DNA of 64,000 bases from positions 3,906,001 through 3,970,000 of the forward strand of contig CATNEN010000008.1 in NCBI GenBank assembly GCA_950097015.1, written 5' to 3'. Positions within the stretch are counted from its first letter, which is position 1, and each line of letters begins with the position of its first letter. Origin of the DNA: Macrostomum hystrix (lineage: Eukaryota > Animalia > Platyhelminthes). The position numbers were made by a program, and so were the translations under genes. Under the pieces are notes generated by a model, which did not search any database, had not been told where the DNA came from, and saw only the letters and a program-made list of their open reading frames with translations. Below are positions 1-55,277 of the stretch, one piece after another.

Positions 1-3000
1 CCACCCATGCCCAGCTTGTGTTCCAGGTAGGCAGTGCGTAGGTAACAGGCGGCAAGCTCCGAGTGCAGGGCTGACTCGGCGGCTTCGGGAAGCGGACGGT
101 GCGGTCGTAGCGAAGCTTGAGCTCAGCGTGCTGTCCGGGGCTGACTAGAATCGAGTCGGAGCGGCGCGGGTACTGGCCAGCGGGAACCACAGCTACCTGA
201 TTATTAGTTTCAGATGATCAAAACTATACGAGCTACTCAATTCATCATGTTCTGTTTGTGTTTAATTATGCTATACCGATACAACTAATTAGCTTTCTGA
301 TATTTTCTAGTGCAGCTGAAAACCATTGCGACAATGCAGAGTAATGAGTCGATGTTTTGCTATTTGAGCGACCTTCCAAGCCAAAGTGAAACTCAATCCC
401 GTTAAGTCTCCTTACTCTCAATGCGCTCATGGTGTCGTCTGAATCCAGCAGCCCTGACGTGAGCACAGCTGCCGTCTTGCTCAGGTTGGCGAACTGCCTT
501 CCAAGCGTGTCCGTGTCATCGGTGAAGTAGCTGAAGGTCAGGCGGGATTCCGTCGCCTTGTTAGTTGTAAACAGCTCTGCGAAGCCGGAGGTGTTGAAGC
601 GATGGCAGGGTCCCAGCTGCGGATGCAGCACAGTCTGGAAGTTGAGCAGGGAGCAGGGGTGACCTGCAAAGCTGCAGTCGGTCAATCCGATGCCCAGGCT
701 ACTGCCGAAACGCGTAGCAAGCTGATCGGCACCGACCCTTTCGCGTATCACGCTTGTAACTGCACGAATTTTTGTGTCTGCAAGATGCAAAAGTTTCATC
801 CTTTGAAATTTCGAAACTGAAGGCAGAAATGGACGAAACAATATAAGACGGTTCGAGACGAGGCGAGGCGAGACGAGACGAAATAAGACTGACAAGACGA
901 GACGAAACGAGACGAGACGAAACGAGACGAGATGAGATGAGAGGAGACGAGACGAGATGAGACGAAATAAGATGATACGAAACGAGACGAGATGAGATGA
1001 GATGAGACGAGACGAAACGAGACGAGATGAGATGAGATGAGACGAGACGAGACGAGATGAAACGAAATAAGATGAGACGAGACGAGACGAAATAAGACTG
1101 ACAAGACGAAACGAAACGAGAAGAGACGAACCGAGATGAGAGGAGACGAGACGAGATGAGATGAGAGGAGACGAGACGAGATGAGATGAGAGGAGACGAG
1201 ACGAGATGAGATGAGAGGAGACGAGACGAGATGAGATGAGAGGAGACGAGACGAAATAAGATGAGAGGAGACGAGACGAAACGAGACGAGACGAAACGAG
1301 ACGAGATGAGATGAGACGAGACGAGATGAAATAAGACGAGACGAAACGAGACGAGACGAGATGAGACGAGACGAAACGAAACGAGACGAGATGAGATGAG
1401 ATGAGATGAGACGAGACGATGTAAGATGAGACGAGATGAGCAGAGACATGACAAACGTAAAGATTTTTAGCGCTTTTATACTTAATAGTTTAAGAAATTA
1501 ATAAAAAAATTAATACTTTTATAATCCAGATAAGTCATAGCCCAGGCAAGTCGAATGTGGGTTGAAAAACTTGAACTCACGGCAGGTGTCCATATTGCAG
1601 GTGTTGAAGTCGACAATGTCACCAATACGATAGGCGCACACAGGCCACACAGAGTCGATCATTGTTATGCGCCTAAAATGTTAGAAATCGATTGAGTTTC
1701 GGATGTAACTAGCTGTCAATCGCAGGCATGTATCAGGTAGCACAGCTGGCTGTTGCAGTTACCGGGCCACGAGACTGTTATCAGGCAATAAATACACGTA
1801 GTTGAGCACGACTCTGGCTGGTCTGCAGTAGGAATGGTTCAGCTCCATGTCTGATGTTTCGATGCTGACGTTCATAATTCTGCCTACAATTTAGGTTGCG
1901 GTATACATGGGTGCAATATTGATGCACAATGGCTGGCCTTTTCTATCAGCTACTCACTCATCAGCGCATCCGGATGGACTGGGTATTCCATGCTTCCGGA
2001 CTCCAAGCCGGTTTTGAGTTCAGCCCAGTTCAAGCAGGGCTGCTGGCGCCGGGAGACTCGCTGATAGCCGGTGTACCGCTGCAGCTGCTGGTTGCTGAAC
2101 ACACCGCCGACGTCCGCGTTCAGGCAGTCGTATTTTTGCGACATAGCTGCGAGACATGATGGCAAAGTGCATCGGTGATAACAGCGTGAGGTGTGATAGC
2201 AACGAACACGCGTTGTCTACTACTCACGACAGTAGGGCACGTTGCAGTAGGTGGCCGCAAGCCCGCCTCCTTCAGTTCGATAGAAGCAGTAGGGACCTTG
2301 GCTGAAGCTGCTGACAGACGTCCTATAGGGCAGATACAGCAGCTTTGGGGCTAAAATGCACAGTGAAATTCCATTGAATAGGTCTGGTGCATTTTGAATT
2401 TGCTTCGAGACAAATTTCTAGAGCCCTGGAAGCAAAAGTTTGGGTTGTGATATACGAGGTAAATGTGGCCTCGCCGCGTTATCGACCTCAGGAGACAGGT
2501 GCTAACCGTTCTGCCACTCACCCCCTAAGGATCTGGAAGCAAAGCTGGTCTATATGAATTCCCCGCTTAAATGCCAAAGTACGCAGAAAAAAACACTTCA
2601 AATCTCACCGGAATTCGATATTCGAAAGACATTGATAAGCCCATTGGTTGCCGAGCCGCACACCTGCGAGTAGTTGCCTGGACAGCTAGTCCAGCAGCCT
2701 GTCACCGGGCTGGCCCAGGCGCCTCCACGCGAGCAGTAGCAACGGTTGTCAACGAGGCCCATATGGCTAAAGTCCCGCCCGTAGCAACAGTGGGCGCAAA
2801 CTTCGTAGGTCAAGTCGAACAGCTGGTCCTCCAGGCAGAGCTCGGTGAAGTTGGCACCGCTGGCGTTGATTATTGGTAGGCAACCGACGGGATCGAGGAT
2901 CGGACCTGCGGAGTTTGAATAGACACTAGAGTTTGAGATGCTTCAAAAAACTAATCTCTACAGCTGGAGGCCAAGATGCAACAATGACAATCAAAACTTC

Positions 3001-4364
3001 TTGTTCAGAAACGCAAGTACGTTGCACTCATAAATTAACGACTCCAATCGATCACAATCATTGTTGCGTTACATCGACTACGAATAGTGTTACCTCAAGC
3101 CGACTACAATACAAGGTGCATCAAGCCTGCGAATTAAAACGCTGAGAAAGTACACGTCCGTCAGCAAAAAACTCACGGCTGGCGATATCATAGAAGTCGG
3201 TCAGAGGCAGGCCAGGCGGCTGCCGGCAGCTTCTCTCGCTGTCTGCGTAGCGAGCTTTGAAAATCATTGCTGCCAGATCGTTCAGGCCGGCAGCCTGCAG
3301 CTCAATGGCGGCGTCATTCCAGCCGATGCAGTCGCTGAAGGTCACGTAGGGCTTCAACTCGAAGGCTGACTGGACTTCGCCTGAGTAGAGCGACACAACA
3401 GAGAGGCTGCCGGAGTACTCCTCACCAGACAGGCTCCTGCGGCACTTTGAAGTATCTTGAGGAAAACAGATGTTCGGAATAATTGCAACAGAACAGATTG
3501 CCTAACAGTAGAAAGAACACGAGGGGTGTTTCAAATACCCACCTATTTTTCTGCATCTCCCAAATTACTCAACGAATCGCCATGAAAATGCAGAACACGA
3601 GCTACAATTTTCCGCTGTATCCGATGCAACATTCCCATAATCACAAAACATTGCCATCGTCGAGAAATTCAATGATTATCGTCAGGGTGTCTGGTGGCCA
3701 AAAACAACCAATAAAGCCATAATTTTTCTGCTCAGAAAATTTCCTCATGTAACTATGTGAGCTATTATTGTTGATCATAAAATATTTGAATATATATTTC
3801 TTCTCAGACAACTCAATTAACTCAAGAATGCTCACCTTGGCCCATGTACTGCAGCACGGCACTGATGTTGGCCTCAACAGCTGACATCACATGGCCGAGG
3901 GCGACAGCGGTGTCCGCCAGCTGCTGCGGCATGGCCTCGAACAGGTCGGTGCGCTCAGTCACAATGCTGAACCTGAGCTGGTCCGTCTTACATTTGGTAT
4001 TGCATCTTTTATTGTTAATCACCGAGTTGCTGCTTATTCCAGTAGTCAAGCGGCTCATTGTCACCAGATCCGTGGGACAAAAGTACACGTCGGGAAACTC
4101 GAACGGCAGCGAGGTTGACAGGCTGGTTGAGAGCGGCACACTCACGAACTGCAGGCCCAGAGTGTACATGTGGTAGGTGAAGCCACCGTAGGTGCCGAGC
4201 AGGAAGCACAGCCACAGGGCCCTTCCAAAGGGGGTGGCTTGCGCGCCGAACCTGCCCAGTCCGTGGGCGGTGGTGTATTCGCAGAACTGTGCCAGAAGGA
4301 CCCGACCACCAGCCGCTCTGCGTGGTTCCTTTTCGCCTTGGTCTGTCAGCGATTCTTGATTCAT
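1..4364 (-). CDS. DEG/ENaC (amiloride-sensitive channel family) subunit with a kringle(WSC)-kringle insertion in the finger region; 3' end lies beyond the window start
   Basis: Exons (-): 4364-3836, 3455-3177, 2905-2609, 2350-2228, 2146-1958, 1883-1763, 1672-1581, 816-416, 196-<1. All introns are GT-AG and the phases join in frame. Family motifs: pre-TM1 HG motif (FCEYTTAHGLGR), TM1 (RALWLCFLLGTYGGFTYHMY), FPDVYFC (FPAVTxC-like), DCSFAGHPC...HPQLGPCHRFN, LRVAVVP...ILVSPG...RFPKPPSQPC. Confidence 0.88.
855..1448. repeat. (GAGAC/GAGAT)n pentamer microsatellite in a DEG/ENaC intron
   Basis: Direct reading; it produces the spurious SSRLV/LISSH ORFs. Confidence 0.95.
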
Positions 4365-4859
4365 TTTTTCCTGCTGATTTTTTTTAGCCTCTGTGCGTTT
4401 TCCTTTTTATTTAAATATACGGCTTTGCTGGGGTCAATGCTGGGAGGACAGTAGATGCTGGCACTGGGAAAAACTGGCCAAATAATGATTAAGCTGAGGC
4501 TATGATGCGGGAAGTCAAGAGAGGCGACTCAATTTATCTCATTACTCATACCTGACACAAGCAGCGGCGGCAAAGTCATATGATGAGCAGCGGATAAGGC
4601 ATTTCAGTGACATAAATTTATGTCAGAATCCACATTCATGCGCTCCCAGGTTACTTATCAATTTATATTTTACTCAGGATGAAAAAAGCCGCAATTAGCA
4701 AACAGAGCTGCGTTGTGATAGCGCTCTGTTCTGTCAACCACGGACAGAACACGGACTGTTCTGTTCTTTTCTGTTCTTTCCTGTCATGTTCTGTTCAGTT
4801 TTTTTGTCTGAATTAATAGTTAATTTTATAATTAATAATAATAATAATAATATTTGATT

Positions 4860-5135
4860 ACACCTGCCCAAATTGGGTCAGATTTGCAGCCGACAGCACA
4901 GCCGCAGCTAATGCGCGGCGCATCTGATGGCTGCGTTCAGTCCATGGACTGGGGGGACGCCACACCCACCTTCAATTATCACAGCTAATGCTGGTACCCA
5001 TTTAACAGCGGGGTGAACTGAAGCAATTGAGAGTTGAGTGTCTTGCTAAAGGACACAAATTGTTCCAATGGAGTCGGGAATAGAATCCCCGACCTTAAAG
5101 TTGTGAGTCCGACGCCCTAACCACTAGGCTACAAC
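4860..5135 (-). mobile_element. tRNA-derived SINE, family A
   Basis: Minus-strand head GGTTGTAGCCTAGTGGTTAG (A box) with a B-box-like GATTCTATTCC, then a CORE/Meta-like TGTGTCCTTTAGCAAGACACTCAACTC...AAATGGGTACC segment and an (ATT)n tail. Near-identical copies occur elsewhere in the window. Confidence 0.8.
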
Positions 5136-5641
5136 CTTCTTTGTCTACATTGTCTACGTTGTCTAGGCTACAACCTACAACCTCGTCTTTCTTGTCAAGA
5201 ACGCGGTCCAACATAGTGTAATAACACAAACAAGCACAGTTAGTGCATAAAACAATAGACCTTCTGGCACCAGAAAACATATTATTCTTAGTCCTATTTT
5301 GCTCGTAGTGTCTAGCAGACTAATTTGATCAAAAAAAATTGCCTACCACGTTTCATGACCAGCGCACTACTTTACTAGCAGCCAATGCTGCAATACTTGT
5401 ACTTTACCCTATTCTATACGTCTTCTATATAACACAATCTACCGCCTGCAGGCACTAGAGCTAGTTAAGGCTCTGATTATAAATAACAGTATAAATAATA
5501 TTTTGCTTTACCTTGTAATAAGCGTTTTCTACTTGTTGCTATTGCCCGATGTTCAGTAGTACAGTTAGCGTATTTTGTACATTAAAAAAATAAAAAAACT
5601 GCTTTTATTTAAAATTCTTTCAAATAGCTCAGATTGGTTAA

Positions 5642-5885
5642 CTAAGTCAGTTCCTTCAGTTATGACCATAGACAGTATAGACTAGATCGGTTGAGAAAGT
5701 CAGTTCCTTCAGTTATGACCATAGACAGTATAGCTCAGATCGGTTGATTAAGTCAGTTCCTTCAGTTATGACCATAGACAGTATAGACTAGATCGTTTGA
5801 GAAAGTCAGTTCCTACAGTTGTAGCCATAGACAGTATAGCTGCGATCGGAGAGAGAGTCAGTAGCTCTAGCTTGCCCATAGACAG
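5642..5885. repeat. About 55-bp tandem repeat (about 4.5 copies)
   Basis: Unit agtcagttccttcagttatgaccatagacagtatag(a/c)...gatcggttga. Confidence 0.85.
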
Positions 5886-6835
5886 CGGCTGAAATAGGAA
5901 ATTGGCACACAAGGTGCAAGCATAGAATGCTTGAATTTTTGTTATCCTAGACCTAAATATTAAATGTGGATTTTTTTTTCATATCATTCGCAGAATTTTG
6001 TCTTTTCAACTTTTCACTCAGTATCTGCACCTCGCGGAGCATTCAAACGAACCTGATTTGTTGCACAATCTCTGATTTAGGCTTGCTTTTAAAAAGAATA
6101 ATAATATTCTATTATTCTGAGAAAAAATGGTAGATTGTGATCTAAAATGGAAAGCTTTTTATTTAGACTCGCATCTAACTTGTTTGGTGATAAAATCGGC
6201 AGATATGCTATTGGTCACACTGATTTCAATCCAATATTTTTTTAGTTTCATTTTCATTTGGCGCAGCTACCCCAGTAGAGTTTCAGAATCTTTGATAACG
6301 AATATTGAAATGGTTTCACACCGGCAAGTCTTGTTACAACTGGCTCTGCGGCATGCCATTAGGAAAAGGAAAGCTTGGGGAGTTTTTTGATGCAACAGCA
6401 AAGATAAACTAAATCCCCCTCTGGGAAGCGAACACGGGATTCTCGTATTCATCTTAGCGCTGAGAAAAAATGAGAGAAAATTTAGAAGATTGACGTCTTG
6501 GTGGGCTGCTGCTGCTGCTGCTGCTGCATAGATGACGACTGTTCCAACATTTCCTACCTGGTAGTTGCCCCGCTGTGAGTTACTTCCAACGAGAACCGAA
6601 CTGCCCCCGCTGTGTACGGGCCAGTTGCGAGAGGCGGACAGGACCGAGAGGGGAAAAGCTCTTTAGTTTAGAAATGCGGATGGCACAACTGAAGTCAGAA
6701 TGAAGGCCCAGCTTCAAAGGCTTTCGATTCGACGACATATTTTAGAAGACCGTTTTTTCAATGCCTCCTCCCTCCCTCTCTGGTTATCACAGCCGCCTGT
6801 CAATAAAAATTAGTGTCCATTTCGATTCTGTACAG

Positions 6836-26363: not shown

Positions 26364-29300
26364 TTACTTCGCTCCATCGTCAGCGTCTGACAGCGACGGC
26401 GTGGATATCGACATTGACGAGTCGTCATCATCATCACCATTGAAAGCTGACTCCTCAGCCTCCTGAATCTCCAGGCCGACAGCGTGGGCCCGAAATTGCA
26501 CCCGAGACTCGAGGCAGACGCCCCGGGCGGCCGACCGGCAGCTGTCGAGGCATCGCCGAGCGGACCGCTTGTCGCCCTGGCTGGCGCGCAATCGGGCCAA
26601 CTCCAGCCAGGCCCAGGCGGTCACGTGACGATCGCGCACTTTGCCAAGCCGGCCCTCTGTCACCTGCAGCAGGCACTGCTCCGCCTGTGTTTCTCGCTTC
26701 AATTCGGCCATGCAGGCGCCCTTCAACAGCAGCACCAAGGCCAGATCGTCGGCAGTTGTCGAGTCGGCAGCATCGGCGCCCGCAGCATCAACTAAGCGAT
26801 CGATTTCGTCTGAGGCGGCCTGAACGTCGGCCAAATGGCCGGCCAGGGATTCTGGATCTCGGCCAACTGCCGGCAGGCCGTTCCAAGCGTAGACCAACTC
26901 AAGGCCTGGCAGGATTAGCCTGACCCGGGGGTGTCTAGTTTGATTTTCGGCATTATTTCCTGCGCCATCTACTGTTGGATTCTGAGATTCTGTTGCATTT
27001 TCAGCATCGCATGCAGTCGAGGCTGCTGACAGTTTGCGCACGAAGCGTGCAGCCCTCAGCGCGGCCAATCGTTCAACAGGCAAATTGGGCACGCCGCCAC
27101 CGCAGCACAGAGTGTCGGAGACTTCCTTCATTAGCCGTGCCACTTCCGGGTCGTCAACTGCGCCGCTCTGATAAATAAAAGCCGCGCGCTGATAGAGAAC
27201 AGTGGCCCTACTCCAGCGGGTCTGGCCGGACAGCTCCAGGGCGCAGCAGGCAGCCTCGCGCCACCGGCCAGCGTAGGCCATGGCCCACATCAGCTCCCAG
27301 CGACACAGCTGGCGCAGCTGCGGCCACTCAGCCTGAACTGAGAGGCTGCGCTCGAACGACTCGGCGGCCTGGCGGGCGCGACCGCTCAGCAGGTGGTGTC
27401 GGCCCTGCATGCATGGGCGGTGAATAATAATAATATTTGCAGGAGGGCTGCGGGCTACGAGACATCATTTGGGGACAGTTGACCCGCAGACAGCGAGGAG
27501 GCAATTCTGTCTCCTGAGCACACGCTCACACAGGTGTGTGCATCGGCTCAAAGAGTCGATTCAAAGAGACCAGAAGGTGTGATGCAGCTAGTCAATTCAA
27601 AGAGACCAGAAGGTGTGATGCAGCTAGTCGATTCAAAGAGACCAGAAGGTGTGATGCAGCTAGTCGATTCAAAGAGACCAGAAGGTGTGATGCAGCTAGT
27701 CGATTCAAAGAGACCAGAAGGTGTGATGCAGCTAGTCAATTCAAAGAGACCAGAAGGTGTGATGCAGCTAGTCGATTCAAAGAGACCAGAAGGTGTGATG
27801 CAGCTAGTCGATTCAAAGAGACCAGAAGGTGTGATGCAGCTAGTCGATTCAAAGAGACCAGAAGGTGTGATGCAGCTAGTCAATTCAAAGAGACCAGAAG
27901 GTGTGATGCAGCTAGTCGATTCAAAGAGACCAGAAGGTGTGATGCAGCTAGTCGATTCAAAGAGACCAGAAGGTGTGATGCAGCTAGTCGATTCAAAGAG
28001 ACCAGAAGGTGTGATGCAGCTAGTCGATTCAAAGAGACCAGAAGGTGTGATGCAGCTAGTCGATTCAAAGAGACCAGAAGGTGTGATGCAGCTAGTCGAT
28101 TCAAAGAGACCAGAAGGTGTGATGCAGCTAGTCGATTCAAAGAGACCAGAAGGTGTGATGCAGCTAGTCGATTCAAAGAGACCAGAAGGTGTGATGCAGC
28201 TAGTCGATTCAAAGAGACCAGAAGGTGTGATGCAGCTAGTCGATTCAAAGAGACCAGAAGGTGTGATGCAGCTAGTCGATTCAAAGAGACCAGAAGGTGT
28301 GATGCAGCTAGTCGATTCAAAGAGACCAGAAGGTGTGATGCAGCTAGTCGATTCAAAGAGACCAGAAGGTGTGATGCAGCTAGTCGATTAAAAGAGATCG
28401 AAAATCAGAGGTCTGACCAGCTCAAAAGATCACCTCAAAGTAGAGAAACAGAGCTCCGTCAGGATACCGCTGTAGGCAGGGCTGGAGCAGTCTGTCAACA
28501 GCTTGGAGATCCACAGAGCCCAGCACGTGCGTAAACGAGGTGTGATAGGCCAGTAGCAGGACTCGAACCAGCGGGGCGCGCAGGCTGCCATCCATGCTGG
28601 CCGCGGTGCGGAGCTGGCGGAGGCCGCGTCTCCGGTTGCCGCTGAAGCCAACGAACTGCAGCAGACGGAGCAGGGCCGTTGGGAGCAGGCTCAGCAGCAG
28701 ATTGAAAGCGCCGTCGCCCAGTCTGTTACGAAGAGGCAAGCGTAGGTGTAAGGCAGGTAGGCAAGTGGACTTATAGCGGACTCGCGGGTACACACCTGGC
28801 TCCGCTCTCAAAGTGCATGCGCAGCTCCGGGCAGCCCCAGGCCCGCTTGCGCAGGAGGCGCCAGCACAGCCGGTAGGCCCGATAGCAGTCGCGTATTTTC
28901 AGGCCGCCTCGAACGAAGCCCATGAGGCTCTCGTCCTGGGCGAAGGTGAGTACAGCCTTCTCTAATAGCAGCTCGGCGTAGCACAGCTCGGCGTGACACT
29001 GCTCGTCGGTGAAGTCGCCTGGCTTCAGCAGGAGCGACGCCGCCGCAGCCAGGCCGTGACGCGGTCGACGGTGGCGCTGGCAGACACGCAGGGCTCGCTT
29101 GGTTGCGTCAACGGCTCGATGGATGTCGGCCTGCTCCAGGGTCATGGAGGCCTGCATGTAGCAGATTGTGGAGCAGCTCAGGCTGTGGTACATGGATGAC
29201 TCCGCTCTGTTGGATGGGATTATCGTTGTGGCTCAGCGTTAGTTTTGCGTTTTACGGGCTACTCGCAGGAGGCCAAGACAACGGGTCGTACCATAAAGCT

Positions 29301-51854: not shown

Positions 51855-54800
51855 CTAGTTGAGCTTCAGGTATTGCGCAGGCACTAAGCCTCTCTTGCCA
51901 TTAACCTCGGCGTTGTACATGCCATCAGGTCTGACTGGCCCGAAGGTTTGCACATTGTCGCCACGGTGGAGCTCCAATTCGAATGGTGGAAAGGCTGACG
52001 GCGAGTGCTCACTGGGCTGATAGTCGTACAGAGCCTTGCGAACAAACGGCTGCGGCGACGTTGGCGGTGGTAGGCCCAGACGAGCGGCCGCGCCGGCTGG
52101 CGAATTGTCACGGGTGCGAAAGCGATCGTCGTTTGGCGCTGTGACAGAAGACAAAGGCTGCTGCTGCTGCTGATGCTGTGGTGACTCTGGCCTTGCGCCA
52201 TTAGTTCCATCCGGATTCTGGACCACCGGTGCTGGACTGTTGCTGCCATTCGCTTGGTGGCGGCTCTCTGCTTGCTGGAGAGGTGGGGGAGGCGGTGGCT
52301 GCTCACTGAAGTTTGGTCGGTGTTCGGCTGGCCGCTCGACTTCAACTGTAAGAGGTGATGTCAGTTCGCGGTGCTGCCCAGTGTTGACAGACAAAGCCGT
52401 GGGTGCCAGGCTCATTTTGGCCTTGTCTGAGGTATCGCCATCGTAGCTGTACGATTGCACACTGATTCTAAGCGCATTGATGTCCACGTCGCCTAGCGAC
52501 GATCTGGGGACGACTGACTTCGTGACGCGCGAGCTTACTACCGGCTGCTGTTCGACCCCGTTGACAAAGATCTTGTATCCGGCCACCACAACTCCATTGC
52601 TTCTGTCCAGCTCGTCTAGGGCTGGTGTGTCCCACTCCACGACAAGATTGTCACTGTCTGGTTGAAAACTGGCTCGCACATTCCCAGGGGGATCCATATG
52701 ATGTGGTATTGGCTGCTGCTGCTGCTGCTGCTGGTCAGGATGATTCTGCTCTCGTGAAAGATACTCCGGTTGATTGTTTTGCTGAGGTTGATAATGCTGG
52801 TCCTGGTCATGGTGAGCTGGCAATCTTGCGGCTGATGATGGCCTTCTATTTTCATCTGGCCCCGGCTGCTGTTCCATCACGGGATACGTGTTTGTCCGGA
52901 CCAACTCTGGTTTGTCGGCAGCTGGCTGCCTAGAGCCATGTTGCGCTGACGGGTCATAGGCACCGGACTGGCTAGGATACTGCCGAACTGGCTCTTCGCG
53001 TGCGTAGTGGTCGTATGGCTCGTGGTTATCTTTGTTGCTGAAACGAGACGGATCGTAACCGCGCTGCTGTCGTCTTGCCTCGTCGTCTTCTCTTTTTGTG
53101 GGCCGAATTGCCTCCTCGTGGACCGCATCTTCTGGTCTCGGTCCAGCGCCTCTTCTCTGCGGTTCGCCTCCCTGCTGCTGGTGAGGAATCTCCCAAGCCG
53201 TTGGTGGCGGAACTCTGGATCCTGGCTGACCCTGAGGCTGCCTTCTATCCTGATGATCATGATTGTCATAATGCCTTTGCGGGCCTATTGACATTGTCGG
53301 CTCATTTTGAACTGGTTGCTGCTGCGCCCTTCTCGCTTCTTGATTTCGAGGCACGTCTTTGCTGGGGTATTGCTGCTCCGGCTGCTGCCGACTGTTGCCG
53401 TATCTGTCCTGCGGTTGGGACTGCGCTCTGTCTTGGCCGTAGCTAGGTGACTGTGAAGACATGCGTGTGCCCTTGACCGGCTCATAAGCTGCCATTGGTG
53501 ATCTCTGAGCGCTGGCGTGCGGACGTCGATCCCTCGATCGTCTTACTCTAGCAGAAAGTGGTTCTCCATCCAGGTAATCATCCAAGTCGATGTAATCATT
53601 CAGCGCGCTGTTTTGATTCCTGTCGGCCTCTTGAAGTAGATCGCGAGGAAGACGATCGCCACCGGCTCTCAGCTCGTTTGCTAGTCGACGAATGAGGTCA
53701 TCCTTCTCCTTGCAGCGATTCTGCAGGCGCTCAACCCTTGGCCTCAACTTGGCCAGCACCAGCTCATTCTTGAACCTTTCTCTTTCCACTTCCTCGTACT
53801 TTTGTTTCACTCTCCTGAAGTCCACTTCCAGGTCTCTATAGAAGTTATTCTCCTTCTCTAACTCATTGAGCACATCTTTCAGTTTATTGAGCTCCTTCTG
53901 TGTGGCCTCTTCGTCCACAGCTTTTTCTCGAAGCAGCTCCTTTAACTGTTGTACTTCAATCATCAGATTACGCCTGTCTTTAGCTAGTTGATTTTTATCC
54001 TTTAAAGCGGATTTCAAATCAAGAACAAGATCATCAAGCACTTCTTTATCGCGTTTTATTGACTCCAGTTGAAGGATTTTGGCTTCCAGAGTTCGAATCG
54101 CCTCAGCCATGTAGGCGTTCTCTTCTTCCAGGTTGTGGCATCGCTCTCTGACATCGACTAGCTTGTCCTTTTGTTCCTTGAGAAGCTTGGCCTCTCTGTT
54201 CGCCGCTTTGCTGTGATTGTCTGCCACGGCCTTCTCGTTCTCAAGGCCGGCAATCTTGGTCTCCGCTTGCGCCAGCTGTTTTGTCAGCTGTTCAATCTGA
54301 TCGTTCTTACTCTTTATCTCCCGATCTTTCCTATTGACAACGCCTTGCATGTTTTTCAGCTCATTTCTAGCCGCTTCTATCTCGAAATTGGCATTGGCCA
54401 GCTCGTCTTTCGTTCGGTCCAAGTCTTCGCTAACCGCTTCCAAACGCTCCGTCTCTCTAAGCGCCTTTTTGGCCACGATAACCCTGTCCAGGTTGTCAAC
54501 CTCGGACTGCAACTGGAAGACGTGTCGGTCTCGTTCAGCTAAGTCTTCAGCTAGTTTAGCGTTCTCAGCCGTGAGCTCTGATATGAGTTTCTCTTGATTG
54601 TTGATAATCCTATCCTTATCTTTTACAGTATGGCGCAACAGGTATGCGTCGTCAGCAGTTTTCAGCTTCCTGTTCATTTCGTTTTCAATGTACTTGTTCG
54701 TCTTCAGCTCGCGCGTTTTAATTCGATTTTCTGCTTTTAGATCGCCGAGCTGCTCCTCCATCTGCCGTCTGCGGTTTTCCTCGTCGTTCAACAGATCCTT

Positions 54801-55277
54801 GGTGTCAGTCGTGGCGTTCATTGGCACCTTGAACGCCTCCTTCGGCTTATCGTCCATCCTGTTCAGCTTCTTGCTCAGCCACGCGGAAGACATCGGATCG
54901 TTGGCTGCCCGGCCACCCAGTTTCTGCGGGTACATCTCCAGCTCCTGGTGATCCAGCACGAGCGAGTTCTCGCTCGGCGTAGGACTTGCGACGTAGAACC
55001 TGTCAGCATCGTTGTAGCCGATAGGTGGTGGTGGCGGAGGCGGGGGAGCCGGTGGCGCTGAGAGTGGCTGATTCGCAGGCTGCTGGTGTTGCTGCTGCTG
55101 CTGTTGTTGTGGTTGCTGGCCTTCCATTGCCTGCTCGTAGCGTCTCTGCTTCTCTTGTATTGCAAGAGAAGGCTTTTTAGGCACTGGTGGTCCGTTCTGC
55201 GGCCACCGCCTGGCGAGTTTAAAGTTACTTATCATGGCCGCGCTTCCCGGCCTTCCGGCCCCTTGATTGGATTGCAT
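51855..55277 (-). CDS. RIM-binding-protein-like scaffold (long coiled coil, one FN3, one C-terminal SH3), uninterrupted 1140-aa CDS
   Basis: FN3 PPGNVRASF...LVVEWDTP...SNGVVVAGYKIFVNG and SH3 ALYDYQPSEHSP...ELELHRGDNVQTFG...DGMYNAEVNGKRGLVPAQYL resemble RIM-BP FN3 and SH3 domains. Heptad-rich region at about aa 160-540. A donor at about 55415 and an acceptor 15 nt before the ATG suggest a 5' UTR intron. Confidence 0.75.
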   Translation of the reverse strand: MQSNQGAGRPGSAAMISNFKLARRWPQNGPPVPKKPSLAIQEKQRRYEQAMEGQQPQQQQQQQHQQPANQPLSAPPAPPPPPPPPIGYNDADRFYVASPTPSENSLVLDHQELEMYPQKLGGRAANDPMSSAWLSKKLNRMDDKPKEAFKVPMNATTDTKDLLNDEENRRRQMEEQLGDLKAENRIKTRELKTNKYIENEMNRKLKTADDAYLLRHTVKDKDRIINNQEKLISELTAENAKLAEDLAERDRHVFQLQSEVDNLDRVIVAKKALRETERLEAVSEDLDRTKDELANANFEIEAARNELKNMQGVVNRKDREIKSKNDQIEQLTKQLAQAETKIAGLENEKAVADNHSKAANREAKLLKEQKDKLVDVRERCHNLEEENAYMAEAIRTLEAKILQLESIKRDKEVLDDLVLDLKSALKDKNQLAKDRRNLMIEVQQLKELLREKAVDEEATQKELNKLKDVLNELEKENNFYRDLEVDFRRVKQKYEEVERERFKNELVLAKLRPRVERLQNRCKEKDDLIRRLANELRAGGDRLPRDLLQEADRNQNSALNDYIDLDDYLDGEPLSARVRRSRDRRPHASAQRSPMAAYEPVKGTRMSSQSPSYGQDRAQSQPQDRYGNSRQQPEQQYPSKDVPRNQEARRAQQQPVQNEPTMSIGPQRHYDNHDHQDRRQPQGQPGSRVPPPTAWEIPHQQQGGEPQRRGAGPRPEDAVHEEAIRPTKREDDEARRQQRGYDPSRFSNKDNHEPYDHYAREEPVRQYPSQSGAYDPSAQHGSRQPAADKPELVRTNTYPVMEQQPGPDENRRPSSAARLPAHHDQDQHYQPQQNNQPEYLSREQNHPDQQQQQQQPIPHHMDPPGNVRASFQPDSDNLVVEWDTPALDELDRSNGVVVAGYKIFVNGVEQQPVVSSRVTKSVVPRSSLGDVDINALRISVQSYSYDGDTSDKAKMSLAPTALSVNTGQHRELTSPLTVEVERPAEHRPNFSEQPPPPPPLQQAESRHQANGSNSPAPVVQNPDGTNGARPESPQHQQQQQPLSSVTAPNDDRFRTRDNSPAGAAARLGLPPPTSPQPFVRKALYDYQPSEHSPSAFPPFELELHRGDNVQTFGPVRPDGMYNAEVNGKRGLVPAQYLKLN

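What the first reader, a model, noticed from the sequence alone, without database searches (positions are those of the whole stretch)
1581..3455. DEG/ENaC channel carrying two kringle-like domains and a WSC domain in its extracellular finger region
Seen: between the FPDVYFC strand and the DCSFAGHPC...GPCHRFN segment, six in-frame exons add about 367 aa. Kringle 1 reads KCRRSLSGEEYSGSLS...DCIGW...SCRQP / GPYCFY...TYCNVPYC. Kringle 2 reads DCLNAD...RYTGYQRVS...PCLNW...LNHSYCRP...WPVCAY...NTCNMDTC. Each has the six-Cys spacing and the CxxW, CRxP and PxC motifs. The WSC segment reads PVGC...LTYEVCAHCC...MGLVDNRCYC...CWTSCPGNYSQVCG...VFR. Established: the finger domain is the variable ligand- and protease-sensing part of DEG/ENaCs; kringle plus WSC occur together in Kremen; WSC occurs in polycystin-1-like proteins and binds glycans. 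I know of no characterised DEG/ENaC with this architecture. Inference: a receptor-channel chimera gated by a protein or glycan ligand, or tethered to matrix for mechanosensing.
Basis: partly seen in the sequence, partly recalled or inferred. Interest (0 to 1): 0.85.

Follow-up and report, generated by a model that had tools for sequence, protein, structure and literature searches.

The report
Sodium channel with built-in kringle–WSC arm
A flatworm sodium-channel gene of the DEG/ENaC family carries a conserved 356-residue, cysteine-rich arm (a sugar-binding-type WSC domain nested inside a kringle-like module, then a second kringle-like module) in the outer part of the channel that normally senses ligands; no paper I could search describes this design, and its role is untested.

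Summary
On the minus strand, nine GT-AG exons give an unbroken 718-aa reading frame that runs off the left edge of the window. Exon 1 and exons 8-9 are DEG/ENaC (Pfam ASC).

- **WSC domain (exon 3): confirmed.** The fold of the window's own exon matches only WSC structures in its top seven ranks, and orthologues score above the Pfam cut-off.
- **Second kringle: a divergent kringle homologue.** Its family profile finds tPA kringle 2 at E 1e-4, and 57 of the 60 PDB matches shown are kringle proteins. It never reaches the Pfam cut-off.
- **First kringle: only kringle-like, and split by the WSC exon.** With the WSC removed it aligns to kringle 2 at P 4e-5.

At least six Macrostomum lignano paralogue groups share the architecture and the intron positions. 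The GenBank ones among them are transcript-derived models, so in that species the channel and the arm lie in one reading frame on one mRNA. No RNA run was listed for this genome.

Function is inferred: a binding or tethering arm on the gating finger. The proteins sit unnamed in databases, and I found no paper on them. This scan had already noted the same family at three other places in this genome.

The parts
3836..4364 (-). Exon 1: start codon, cytoplasmic N-terminus with the HG motif (YTTAHGLGRF), TM1, first palm strand (FPDVYFC) and the first part of the finger (aa 1-177)
   Evidence: Pfam ASC E 2.1e-12, profile positions 1-90. 60% identity over the match to M. lignano P0001, E 3.5e-48. Donor GTGAGC, phase 1.
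3177..3455 (-). Exon 2 (phase 1-1, 93 codons): N-half of kringle-like module 1, with C1 (KCRRSLSGEEYSG), C2 (DCIGW) and C3 (SCRQP)
   Evidence: Splice model. Three invariant Cys and conserved C-R / Y-x-G / C-x-x-W / C-R-x-P motifs in six sequences. No Pfam or PDB sequence hit, either alone or as a profile.
2609..2905 (-). Exon 3 (phase 1-1, 99 codons): WSC domain with 10 conserved Cys, nested inside kringle-like module 1
   Evidence: Pfam WSC E 2.5e-5, 24.8 bits (cut-off 27.8). AF2 model of this exon has pLDDT 73.8. The top seven Foldseek matches are all WSC structures: Wsc1 7pz2 at TM 0.63-0.64, then Kremen1 and glyoxal oxidase. Orthologue WSC scores 39-41 bits and Z about 11.
2228..2350 (-). 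Exon 4 (phase 1-1, 41 codons): C-half of kringle-like module 1, with C4 (GPYCFY) and C5/C6 (TYCNVPYC)
   Evidence: With the family profile A5, 14 of the 15 PDB matches are kringles, each aligned at the kringle's C-terminal end. The best is the Kremen1 kringle at E 0.055. Joined to exon 2 it aligns to kringle 2 at P 3.8e-5.
1958..2146 (-). Exon 5 (phase 1-1): first part of kringle-like module 2, with C1 (DCLNAD), RYTGYQ and C2 (PCLNW)
   Evidence: Splice model. The orthologous segments give Pfam Kringle hits at E 2e-4 to 2e-2 on profile positions 4-41. Profile A1 finds tPA kringle 2 at E 1.1e-4.
1796..1883 (-). Exon 6 (phase 1-2): middle of kringle-like module 2, with C3 (NHSYCRP)
   Evidence: Splice model, donor GTATTT. 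The NFCR block aligns to the NYCRN block of tPA kringle 2.
1581..1672 (-). Exon 7 (phase 2-1): end of kringle-like module 2, with C4 (WPVCAY) and C5/C6 (FNTCNMDTC)
   Evidence: Splice model. The P-x-C...C-x-x-x-x-C block aligns to the end of tPA kringle 2. VIA-align matches to kringles span the whole module in the orthologue model.
778..1580 (-). Intron 7, holding a 566-nt (CGAGA)n microsatellite at 854-1419
   Evidence: Tandem Repeats Finder: period 5, 113.6 copies. GT...AG boundaries.
416..777 (-). Exon 8: the channel ectodomain resumes with the last finger helix and the conserved DCSFAGHPC...GPCHRFN block (aa 533-653)
   Evidence: Pfam ASC E 2.4e-3, profile positions 153-195. The orthologous block aligns to ENaC beta residues 247-277.
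1..196 (-). Exon 9 (partial): palm region. The gene runs off the window edge, so the thumb, knuckle and TM2 are not in the window.
   Evidence: Colinear with P0001 residues 670-735. P0001 continues to an ASC C-terminus with TM2.

Best explanation
The window holds the first two thirds of a gene for a DEG/ENaC sodium-channel subunit from a flatworm related to Macrostomum lignano. A 356-aa cassette of six exons interrupts the channel's finger domain. This is the outer, variable part that binds ligands in FaNaC and ASIC channels and is cut by proteases in ENaC.

The cassette has three parts:
- a kringle-like module split into two halves;
- a true WSC domain encoded by one phase 1-1 exon sitting between those halves (a domain within a domain within a domain);
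- a second, divergent kringle.

Shown: the architecture is real, it is conserved across at least six M. lignano paralogue groups, it lies in one reading frame on transcript-derived models in that species, and its cysteine framework is maintained.

Inferred: the protein assembles as the usual trimer, so the channel would carry three disulfide-rich arms pointing outward. The arm would bind an extracellular glycan or protein, such as matrix, mucus or a secreted partner. Because it is spliced into the finger, it would pass that binding or a mechanical pull on to the gate. At the least, it would anchor the channel at a defined extracellular site.
For: Splice model with canonical junctions and an unbroken frame.

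ASC match on exons 1 and 8. HG motif in exon 1. The orthologue P0001 has the full ASC C-terminus with a G-I-S pore motif in TM2. Its channel part is closest to FaNaC, then ASIC5 and ENaC.

Six M. lignano paralogue groups are colinear with the model. The GenBank M. lignano models derive from RNA-seq transcript assemblies with TransDecoder ORFs (PMC5730564). Intron positions are shared.

The insert is 39% identical to P0001, against 46% for the following channel ectodomain, and all 22 Cys are kept.

WSC: fold Z about 11 to Wsc1, Kremen1 and glyoxal oxidase. The window's own exon gives TM 0.63-0.64 to Wsc1. The P0001 sequence hits the Wsc1 structure 7pz2 at E 2e-6.

Kringle 2: family profile against PDB gives E 1.1e-4 to tPA K2, and 57 of the 60 matches shown are kringle proteins, with three blocks in the right order. 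Pfam Kringle is the only notable hit in 5 of 6 paralogues. At least ten kringle structures match at Z 3.1-4.5 across the whole module.

Kringle 1: the C-half profile hits kringles in 14 of 15 matches. With the WSC removed it aligns to kringle 2 at P 3.8e-5, while the controls give 0.39 (WSC), 0.46 (reversed) and at best 0.022 (30 column shuffles).

Insertion point: the insert falls between Pfam ASC positions of about 129 and 137. The post-insert block aligns to ENaC beta 247-277, just after the finger/GRIP region.
Against: - No RNA evidence for this species: no run was listed.
- The gene's 3' part, with TM2, lies outside the window.
- No kringle segment reaches the Pfam cut-off. The N-half of kringle 1 has no sequence or fold match at all.
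- The multi-domain model is of low confidence (pLDDT 59), so how the two kringle 1 halves pack is not shown.
- Nothing tests binding, gating, cell type or trimer geometry.
- The canonical kringle lysine-binding D-x-D after C-R-N-P is absent (CRPARV, CRQPPG), so a plasminogen-type ligand is unlikely.
- All cassette exons or exon pairs are multiples of three and begin and end in phase 1, so in-frame skipping is possible.
Confidence: 0.5

Rival explanations
1. The arm only positions or stabilises the channel. It would serve for localisation, folding, subunit assembly or protection in a mucus-rich epidermis, and would have no role in opening or closing the pore.
For: WSC and kringle modules are generic binding modules. 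Kremen1's kringle, WSC and CUB domains form a rigid scaffold (PMC5014086, listed). No gating data exist. The arm is about as conserved as the rest of the ectodomain, not more.
Against: The insertion is in the finger, the part of DEG/ENaCs most tied to gating control (established knowledge for FaNaC, ASIC and ENaC), rather than at a terminus where a pure anchor could sit. Another member of the clade (P0005) carries a different lectin-like domain at the same site, which suggests the position matters.
Confidence: 0.25
2. The cassette is an autoinhibitory plug like the ENaC GRIP tract, and proteases remove or loosen it to activate the channel.
For: It occupies roughly the same place as the ENaC finger/GRIP region. 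Kringles are common in protease-related proteins.
Against: No conserved dibasic or furin-type sites flank the cassette. The KCRR of the window is CRTT, CRFT or CRTS in paralogues, and its Cys is framework C1. Twenty-two conserved cysteines argue for a stable folded module, not a disposable peptide.
Confidence: 0.07
3. Exons 2-7 are optional cassette exons or part of another transcript, and the main product in this species is an ordinary DEG/ENaC without the arm.
For: Exons 2, 3, 4 and 5, and the pair 6+7, are each a multiple of three and are phase 1 at both outer ends, as is the whole block. Skipping would therefore keep the frame. No RNA run could be listed for this genome. One M. lignano prediction (P0006) lacks the WSC.
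Against: The transcript-derived GenBank models for three M. lignano paralogue groups, and older predictions for three more, include the cassette in frame. The cassette shows purifying selection, with every cysteine kept. No long ORF or domain hit lies on the opposite strand here.
Confidence: 0.08
4. The two 'kringles' are not kringles but a lineage-specific cysteine-rich fold that shares a few short motifs with them. Only the WSC call is right.
For: Pfam Kringle never reaches its cut-off (best 22 bits against 34.3). The modules are 116-137 aa rather than about 80 and are predicted to contain helices. The fold matches are weak, at Z 3.1-4.5, within the range the tool calls common. The N-half of kringle 1 has no match.
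Against: With the kringle 2 profile, 57 of the 60 PDB matches shown are kringle proteins, with three blocks in the right order. With the kringle 1 C-half profile it is 14 of 15. The matches cover whole kringle domains, for example 67 of 80 residues of prothrombin kringle 2. UniProt's automatic naming calls the P0123 fragment a kringle-domain protein.
Confidence: 0.12

Closest known systems
FaNaC / ASIC / ENaC channels (DEG/ENaC superfamily, Pfam ASC PF00858)
   Same: ASC profile match, HG motif, TM1, the conserved C-x-F...C...G-x-C-x-F-N ectodomain block, and in the orthologue a TM2 with a G-x-S pore motif. By sequence the closest solved structure is FaNaC.
   Different: A 356-aa kringle-like / WSC / kringle-like cassette sits in the finger. 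In the known channels that region holds only short helices (ASIC, FaNaC) or the GRIP tract (ENaC). No ligand or current is known for this clade. The three M. lignano channels tested in PMC9234716 are other genes.
Kremen1/2 (Kringle-WSC-CUB Dickkopf co-receptors)
   Same: It is the one well-known protein that pairs a kringle with a WSC domain. The Kremen1 WSC matches the orthologue's WSC at Z 10.9, and the Kremen1 kringle is the top sequence match to the kringle 1 C-half.
   Different: Kremen is a single-pass receptor with the domains in series plus a CUB domain. Here there is no CUB, the WSC is nested inside a kringle-like module, a second kringle-like module follows, and the whole lies inside an ion-channel ectodomain.
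Yeast Wsc1 cell-wall stress sensor (WSC domain, PDB 7pz2)
   Same: It is the best structural match to the WSC exon (TM 0.63-0.73, Z 11.2). It is a surface module thought to grip glycan and sense mechanical stress (PMC9024836, abstract).
   Different: Wsc1 is a fungal single-pass sensor that signals through a kinase pathway. The flatworm WSC has 10 conserved Cys rather than 8 and is part of a channel.
C. elegans EGAS proteins (EGF plus ASC domain channels)
   Same: They are a precedent for a DEG/ENaC subunit that carries an extra extracellular adhesion-type module (PMC10424705).
   Different: The added module is EGF-type, not kringle or WSC. EGAS channels gave no currents in oocytes in that study, so they give no functional guide.
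MEC-4/MEC-10 touch-channel complex with separate matrix proteins (tether model)
   Same: It offers a conceptual parallel: a DEG/ENaC coupled to extracellular matrix for force sensing (my own knowledge; review PMC4281349 listed).
   Different: In nematodes the matrix-binding parts are separate proteins. Here a candidate matrix-binding arm is part of the channel subunit itself. No mechanosensory role has been shown.

Membership tests
DEG/ENaC (Pfam ASC, PF00858) | Match to the ASC profile above the curated cut-off (23.6 bits) | tested here: met
   Window exon 1 scores 47.3 bits, E 2.1e-12. Exon 8 scores 17.4 bits on its own. The full orthologues score 131-174 bits.
DEG/ENaC (Pfam ASC, PF00858) | Conserved His-Gly motif before TM1, and TM1 itself | tested here: met
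   YTTAHGLGRF followed by the hydrophobic stretch LWLCFLLGTYGGFTYHMYTL in exon 1. It aligns with all paralogues.
DEG/ENaC (Pfam ASC, PF00858) | Second transmembrane helix with the G/S-x-S selectivity motif | not testable with these tools
   The 3' part of the gene lies beyond the window edge. The M. lignano orthologue P0001 has GLWSGISVLTVCELIE.
DEG/ENaC (Pfam ASC, PF00858) | Amiloride-sensitive Na+-selective trimeric channel | not testable with these tools
   This needs expression and electrophysiology.
WSC domain (PF01822) | Match to the WSC profile above the curated cut-off (27.8 bits) | tested here: inconclusive
   The window exon 3 scores 24.8 bits, E 2.5e-5, below the cut-off. The orthologous segments of P0001, P0002 and P0122 score 39.1, 41.1 and 41.4 bits, above it.
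WSC domain (PF01822) | WSC (PAN/apple-like) fold | tested here: met
   The model of the window exon (pLDDT 73.8) has only WSC structures in its top seven Foldseek matches, with Wsc1 at TM 0.63-0.64. The orthologue gives Z 10.4-11.2 to Wsc1, Kremen1 and glyoxal oxidase, and the next match is Z 5.
WSC domain (PF01822) | Conserved cysteine framework (eight Cys in classical WSC) | tested here: met
   Ten Cys lie in the window's WSC exon. Eight are invariant in five sequences and two have a single exception.
Kringle (PF00051) | Match to the Kringle profile above the curated cut-off (34.3 bits) | tested here: not met
   There is no hit on the window exons. The best hit in any relative is 22.1 bits, E 1.9e-4, covering only profile positions 4-32. 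I therefore call the modules kringle-like, or divergent kringle homologues, and do not file them as Pfam kringles.
Kringle (PF00051) | Six-cysteine framework with Y-x-G, C-x-x-W, C-R-x-P and P-x-C-[FY] landmarks | tested here: met
   Six invariant Cys are in each module, and the landmark motifs are conserved across paralogues. The 1-6, 2-4, 3-5 disulfide connectivity itself could not be tested.
Kringle (PF00051) | Significant profile similarity to solved kringles | tested here: inconclusive
   Kringle 2 profile: E 1.1e-4 to tPA K2, and 57 of the 60 matches shown are kringle proteins. Kringle 1 C-half: best E 0.055, but 14 of 15 matches are kringles. Kringle 1 N-half: no match. Kringle 1 aligns to kringle 2 at hhalign P 3.8e-5 with clean controls.
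Kringle (PF00051) | Compact kringle fold of about 80 residues | tested here: inconclusive
   Kringle 2 spans 116 aa in the window and up to 137 aa in relatives. At least ten kringle structures match it at Z 3.1-4.5, covering up to 67 of 80 target residues, which is within the tool's 'common' range. The model is of low confidence. The kringle 1 fold is not resolved.
Kremen | Serial Kringle-WSC-CUB ectodomain on a single-pass receptor | tested here: not met
   No CUB hit was found. The order of parts is half-kringle, WSC, half-kringle, kringle, and the host is an ASC channel.

The most novel reading that the evidence does not exclude
These channels are self-tethered mechanosensors or contact sensors. 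The WSC/kringle arm grips a glycan or protein of the worm's extracellular matrix, mucus or substrate. Displacement of that anchor pulls directly on the finger domain and opens the pore. The matrix tether, which other animals supply as separate proteins, would then be built into the channel subunit.
Probability: 0.2. Interest if true: 0.85.

Novelty: new variant of a known kind. Interest (0 to 1): 0.62.

Why it matters
DEG/ENaC channels are gated by very different stimuli, including protons, peptides, proteases and force, largely through their variable finger domain. How force reaches the gate is a long-standing open question. A natural channel with a folded glycan- or protein-binding arm spliced into the finger would be a ready-made test case. 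The arm can be deleted, swapped or offered ligands, and M. lignano supports transgenesis (PMC5730564), so expression site and loss-of-function effects can be studied.

The gene is also a clean example of exon shuffling. A phase 1-1 WSC exon sits inside a kringle-like module, which itself sits inside a channel domain. A related M. lignano channel fragment carries a fibrinogen-type domain at the same site, which suggests the finger of this clade repeatedly captured lectin-like modules.

Tried and rejected
- **Single exons against PDB sequences.** The kringle and WSC exons gave nothing useful.
- **Kringle 1 N-half as a family profile against PDB.** Nothing.
- **An uninterrupted kringle 1 from paralogue P0006 against Pfam and PDB.** Nothing.
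- **The search for homologous proteins.** Searches with the insert of P0001 and with a three-protein full-length alignment returned only the queries' own clusters and missed known paralogues. These blanks say nothing about other taxa.
- **ESM Atlas by features.** It returned only ordinary ASC clusters at 0.85.
- **Foldseek on the 396-aa insert model.** It resolved only the WSC. The model is of low confidence.
- **Literature.** No hits for the M. lignano gene identifiers, for WSC plus amiloride-sensitive, or for ENaC plus kringle plus WSC.
- **Insert-less relative P0021.** It is a single-exon gene, so it cannot show whether a phase-1 intron predated the insertion.
- **Tandem paralogues next to P0126 and P0001 in M. 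lignano.** None within the flanks fetched.
- **Not done.** It was analysed only inside scripts, so Pfam and structure tools saw the window only exon by exon.
- **Rejected readings.** A nested gene on the plus strand (only short ORFs), and a pseudogene (no stops or frameshifts, all cysteines kept).


Full report
**What is there.** The finding lies on the minus strand. From the six-frame translation I built a splice model with nine exons in the window: 4364-3836, 3455-3177, 2905-2609, 2350-2228, 2146-1958, 1883-1796, 1672-1581, 777-416 and 196-1. Every intron is GT...AG, and the reading frame is unbroken for 718 aa until the gene runs off the left edge of the window. These six exons add 356 aa between FPDVYFC (exon 1) and DCSFAGHPC...GPCHRFN (exon 8). 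Exons 2, 3, 4 and 5 each start and end in phase 1, and so does the pair 6+7. No other copy of the gene lies in the window.

**The host protein.** Exon 1 matches Pfam ASC at E 2.1e-12 (profile positions 1-90) and exon 8 at E 2.4e-3 (positions 153-195). Exon 1 carries the HG motif and TM1.

**Relatives.** A search of 1.84 billion representative proteins with exon 1 gave 117 hits. Seven of the eight with E at or below 1e-10 are Macrostomum lignano proteins; the eighth is an Acropora protein annotated as acid-sensing ion channel 4. The best hit, P0001 (PAA82974.1, Mlig007204.g1), is 1052 aa, matches at E 3.5e-48 and is 60% identical over the match. Earlier notes of this scan call the genome a flatworm related to a lab worm, which fits.

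P0001 and five other M. lignano groups (P0002/P0122, P0003, P0004/P0126, P0007, P0010) are colinear with my spliced model through the whole cassette. The complete ones continue into an ASC C-terminus with TM2 and a G-I-S pore motif. P0007 lacks the C-half of kringle 1. By sequence the channel part is closest to solved FaNaC, then ASIC5 and ENaC.

**Is it one gene?** No RNA run could be listed for this genome, so the splice model has no direct cDNA support here. Three lines of indirect evidence support it.
- The GenBank M. lignano gene models were made from RNA-seq transcript assemblies (StringTie, TACO and a de novo transcriptome) with TransDecoder ORFs (PMC5730564). P0001, P0122 and P0126 therefore count as transcript-level evidence in that species that the channel and the cassette lie in one reading frame.
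- The window's eight exon junctions map onto exon boundaries of the M. lignano locus L001.
- All 22 cysteines of the window's cassette are conserved. The cassette is 39% identical to P0001, against 46% for the channel ectodomain that follows it. That is the pattern of a maintained, folded part.

**WSC.**
- The window's exon 3 scores 24.8 bits for Pfam WSC, just under the 27.8-bit cut-off.
- The orthologous segments score 39-41 bits, above the cut-off. The P0001 sequence also hits the solved yeast Wsc1 domain at E 2e-6.
- An AlphaFold model of the window exon alone has pLDDT 73.8. Its top seven Foldseek matches are all WSC structures: Wsc1 at TM 0.63-0.64, then Kremen1 and glyoxal oxidase.
- In the orthologue model the WSC part gives Z 10.4-11.2 to the same structures, and the next match is Z 5.

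The WSC call is confirmed.

**Kringle 2 (exons 5-7).**
- Singly, the pieces hit nothing.
- In five of six paralogues, Pfam Kringle is the only notable hit, at E 2e-4 to 2e-2. These hits cover only the first third of the profile and fall well below the 34.3-bit cut-off.
- A profile of six paralogue segments finds tPA kringle 2 at E 1.1e-4. Of the 60 PDB matches shown, 57 are kringle proteins. The three conserved blocks (Y-T-G...C-x-x-W, N-F-C-R, P-x-C...C-x-x-x-x-C) align in order.
- In the low-confidence model of the orthologue's cassette (pLDDT 59), at least ten different kringle structures align across the whole module at Z 3.1-4.5. Those values alone would not be convincing.

Taken together, kringle 2 is a divergent kringle homologue with 40-60 extra residues.

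**Kringle 1 (exons 2 and 4).** The WSC exon lies between the third cysteine (SCRQP) and the fourth (GPYCFY), so the WSC is nested inside this module.
- The N-half has the right landmarks (C-x8-Y-x-G, C-x-x-W, C-R-x-P) but no sequence match to anything solved.
- The 42-residue C-half profile matches 15 PDB chains. Fourteen of them are kringles, each aligned at the kringle's C-terminal end, with the Kremen1 kringle first at E 0.055.
- In a script I removed the WSC columns and joined the halves. Kringle 1 then aligns to kringle 2 from C2 to C6 at hhalign P 3.8e-5. Controls gave 0.39 against the WSC module, 0.46 against reversed kringle 2, and at best 0.022 in 30 column shuffles.
- A paralogue prediction with an uninterrupted kringle 1 (P0006) still gets no Pfam or PDB hit.

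I therefore call kringle 1 kringle-like. It is homologous to kringle 2, but its fold is not shown.

**Where the cassette sits.** In the relatives the ASC profile is matched up to about position 129 before the cassette and resumes at about 137 after it. The block after the cassette aligns to ENaC beta 247-277. From what is known of ENaC structures, that lies just after the finger/GRIP region. 'Finger' is therefore a fair description; the exact helix boundaries are my inference.

**How it likely works.** Established knowledge:
- DEG/ENaCs are trimers.
- The finger is their variable gating-control domain.
- WSC domains are glycan-associated surface modules.
- Kringles are protein-binding modules.

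From this I infer a channel with three outward arms that bind an extracellular glycan or protein. The arms would either transmit that binding or a pull to the gate, or simply anchor the channel. The kringle lysine-binding D-x-D is absent, so a plasminogen-type ligand is unlikely. No conserved furin-type sites flank the cassette, which argues against an ENaC-like removable plug. Nothing here tests binding, current or cell type.

**Comparison and novelty.**
- Kremen is the known protein that pairs a kringle with a WSC. In Kremen the domains are in series, a CUB domain follows, and the host is a single-pass receptor.
- C. elegans EGAS proteins are a precedent for a DEG/ENaC with an extra adhesion-type module, in that case EGF (PMC10424705).
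- The three M. lignano channels expressed in oocytes in PMC9234716 are other genes.
- I found no paper on ENaC with kringle or WSC, and none that names the M. lignano genes.
- The proteins are already in GenBank as 'hypothetical protein'. UniProt names them automatically as WSC-domain proteins, and names one fragment a kringle-domain protein.
- This scan had already noted the same family at three other places in this genome. I did not re-test those notes.

I class the finding as a new variant of a known kind.

**Limits.**
- The 3' third of the gene is outside the window.
- There is no RNA evidence for this species.
- The spliced protein had no reference and was analysed only inside scripts.
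- The two word-index homologue searches were uninformative, so the taxonomic range beyond Macrostomum is unknown.

Noticed in passing
P0006 (M. lignano A0A1I8G9S9, 404 aa), residues about 170-404: A paralogue prediction in the same channel clade has the first kringle-like module contiguous, with no WSC between its halves, followed by kringle 2. It is either a WSC-less relative, possibly the state before the WSC exon arrived, or a mis-modelled gene.
   Followed up: partly
P0005 (M. lignano A0A1I8IY71, 313-aa fragment): It has an ASC N-terminus (profile positions 22-128) followed by a fibrinogen C-terminal domain (E 2e-13) at the same finger position. This is a second kind of lectin-like module captured by this channel clade. 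It comes from an older gene prediction, so the fusion needs checking.
   Followed up: partly
L003 (M. lignano NIVC01000571.1), gene at 2001-3665: The insert-less DEG/ENaC relative P0021 (554 aa) is encoded by a single exon, unlike the multi-exon cassette-bearing genes.
   Followed up: no
window 854-1419: A 566-nt (CGAGA)n microsatellite, about 114 copies at 81% match, fills most of intron 7 of the channel gene.
   Followed up: no
window 5624-5862: A tandem repeat of a 53-nt unit (4.5 copies; also readable as 106 nt x 2) lies upstream of the channel gene. No tRNA gene was found in 4400-6500.
   Followed up: no
window 51855-55277 (-): A long open exon of 1140 aa has RIMBP2-like Ig and SH3 domains, so it is probably a RIM-binding-protein gene.
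   Followed up: no
window 26364-27410 (-): An ORF of 348 aa matches the Iml2/TTC39 family at E 8e-27.
   Followed up: no
If so, this gene would be part of a tandem array. I could not read that DNA.
   Followed up: no
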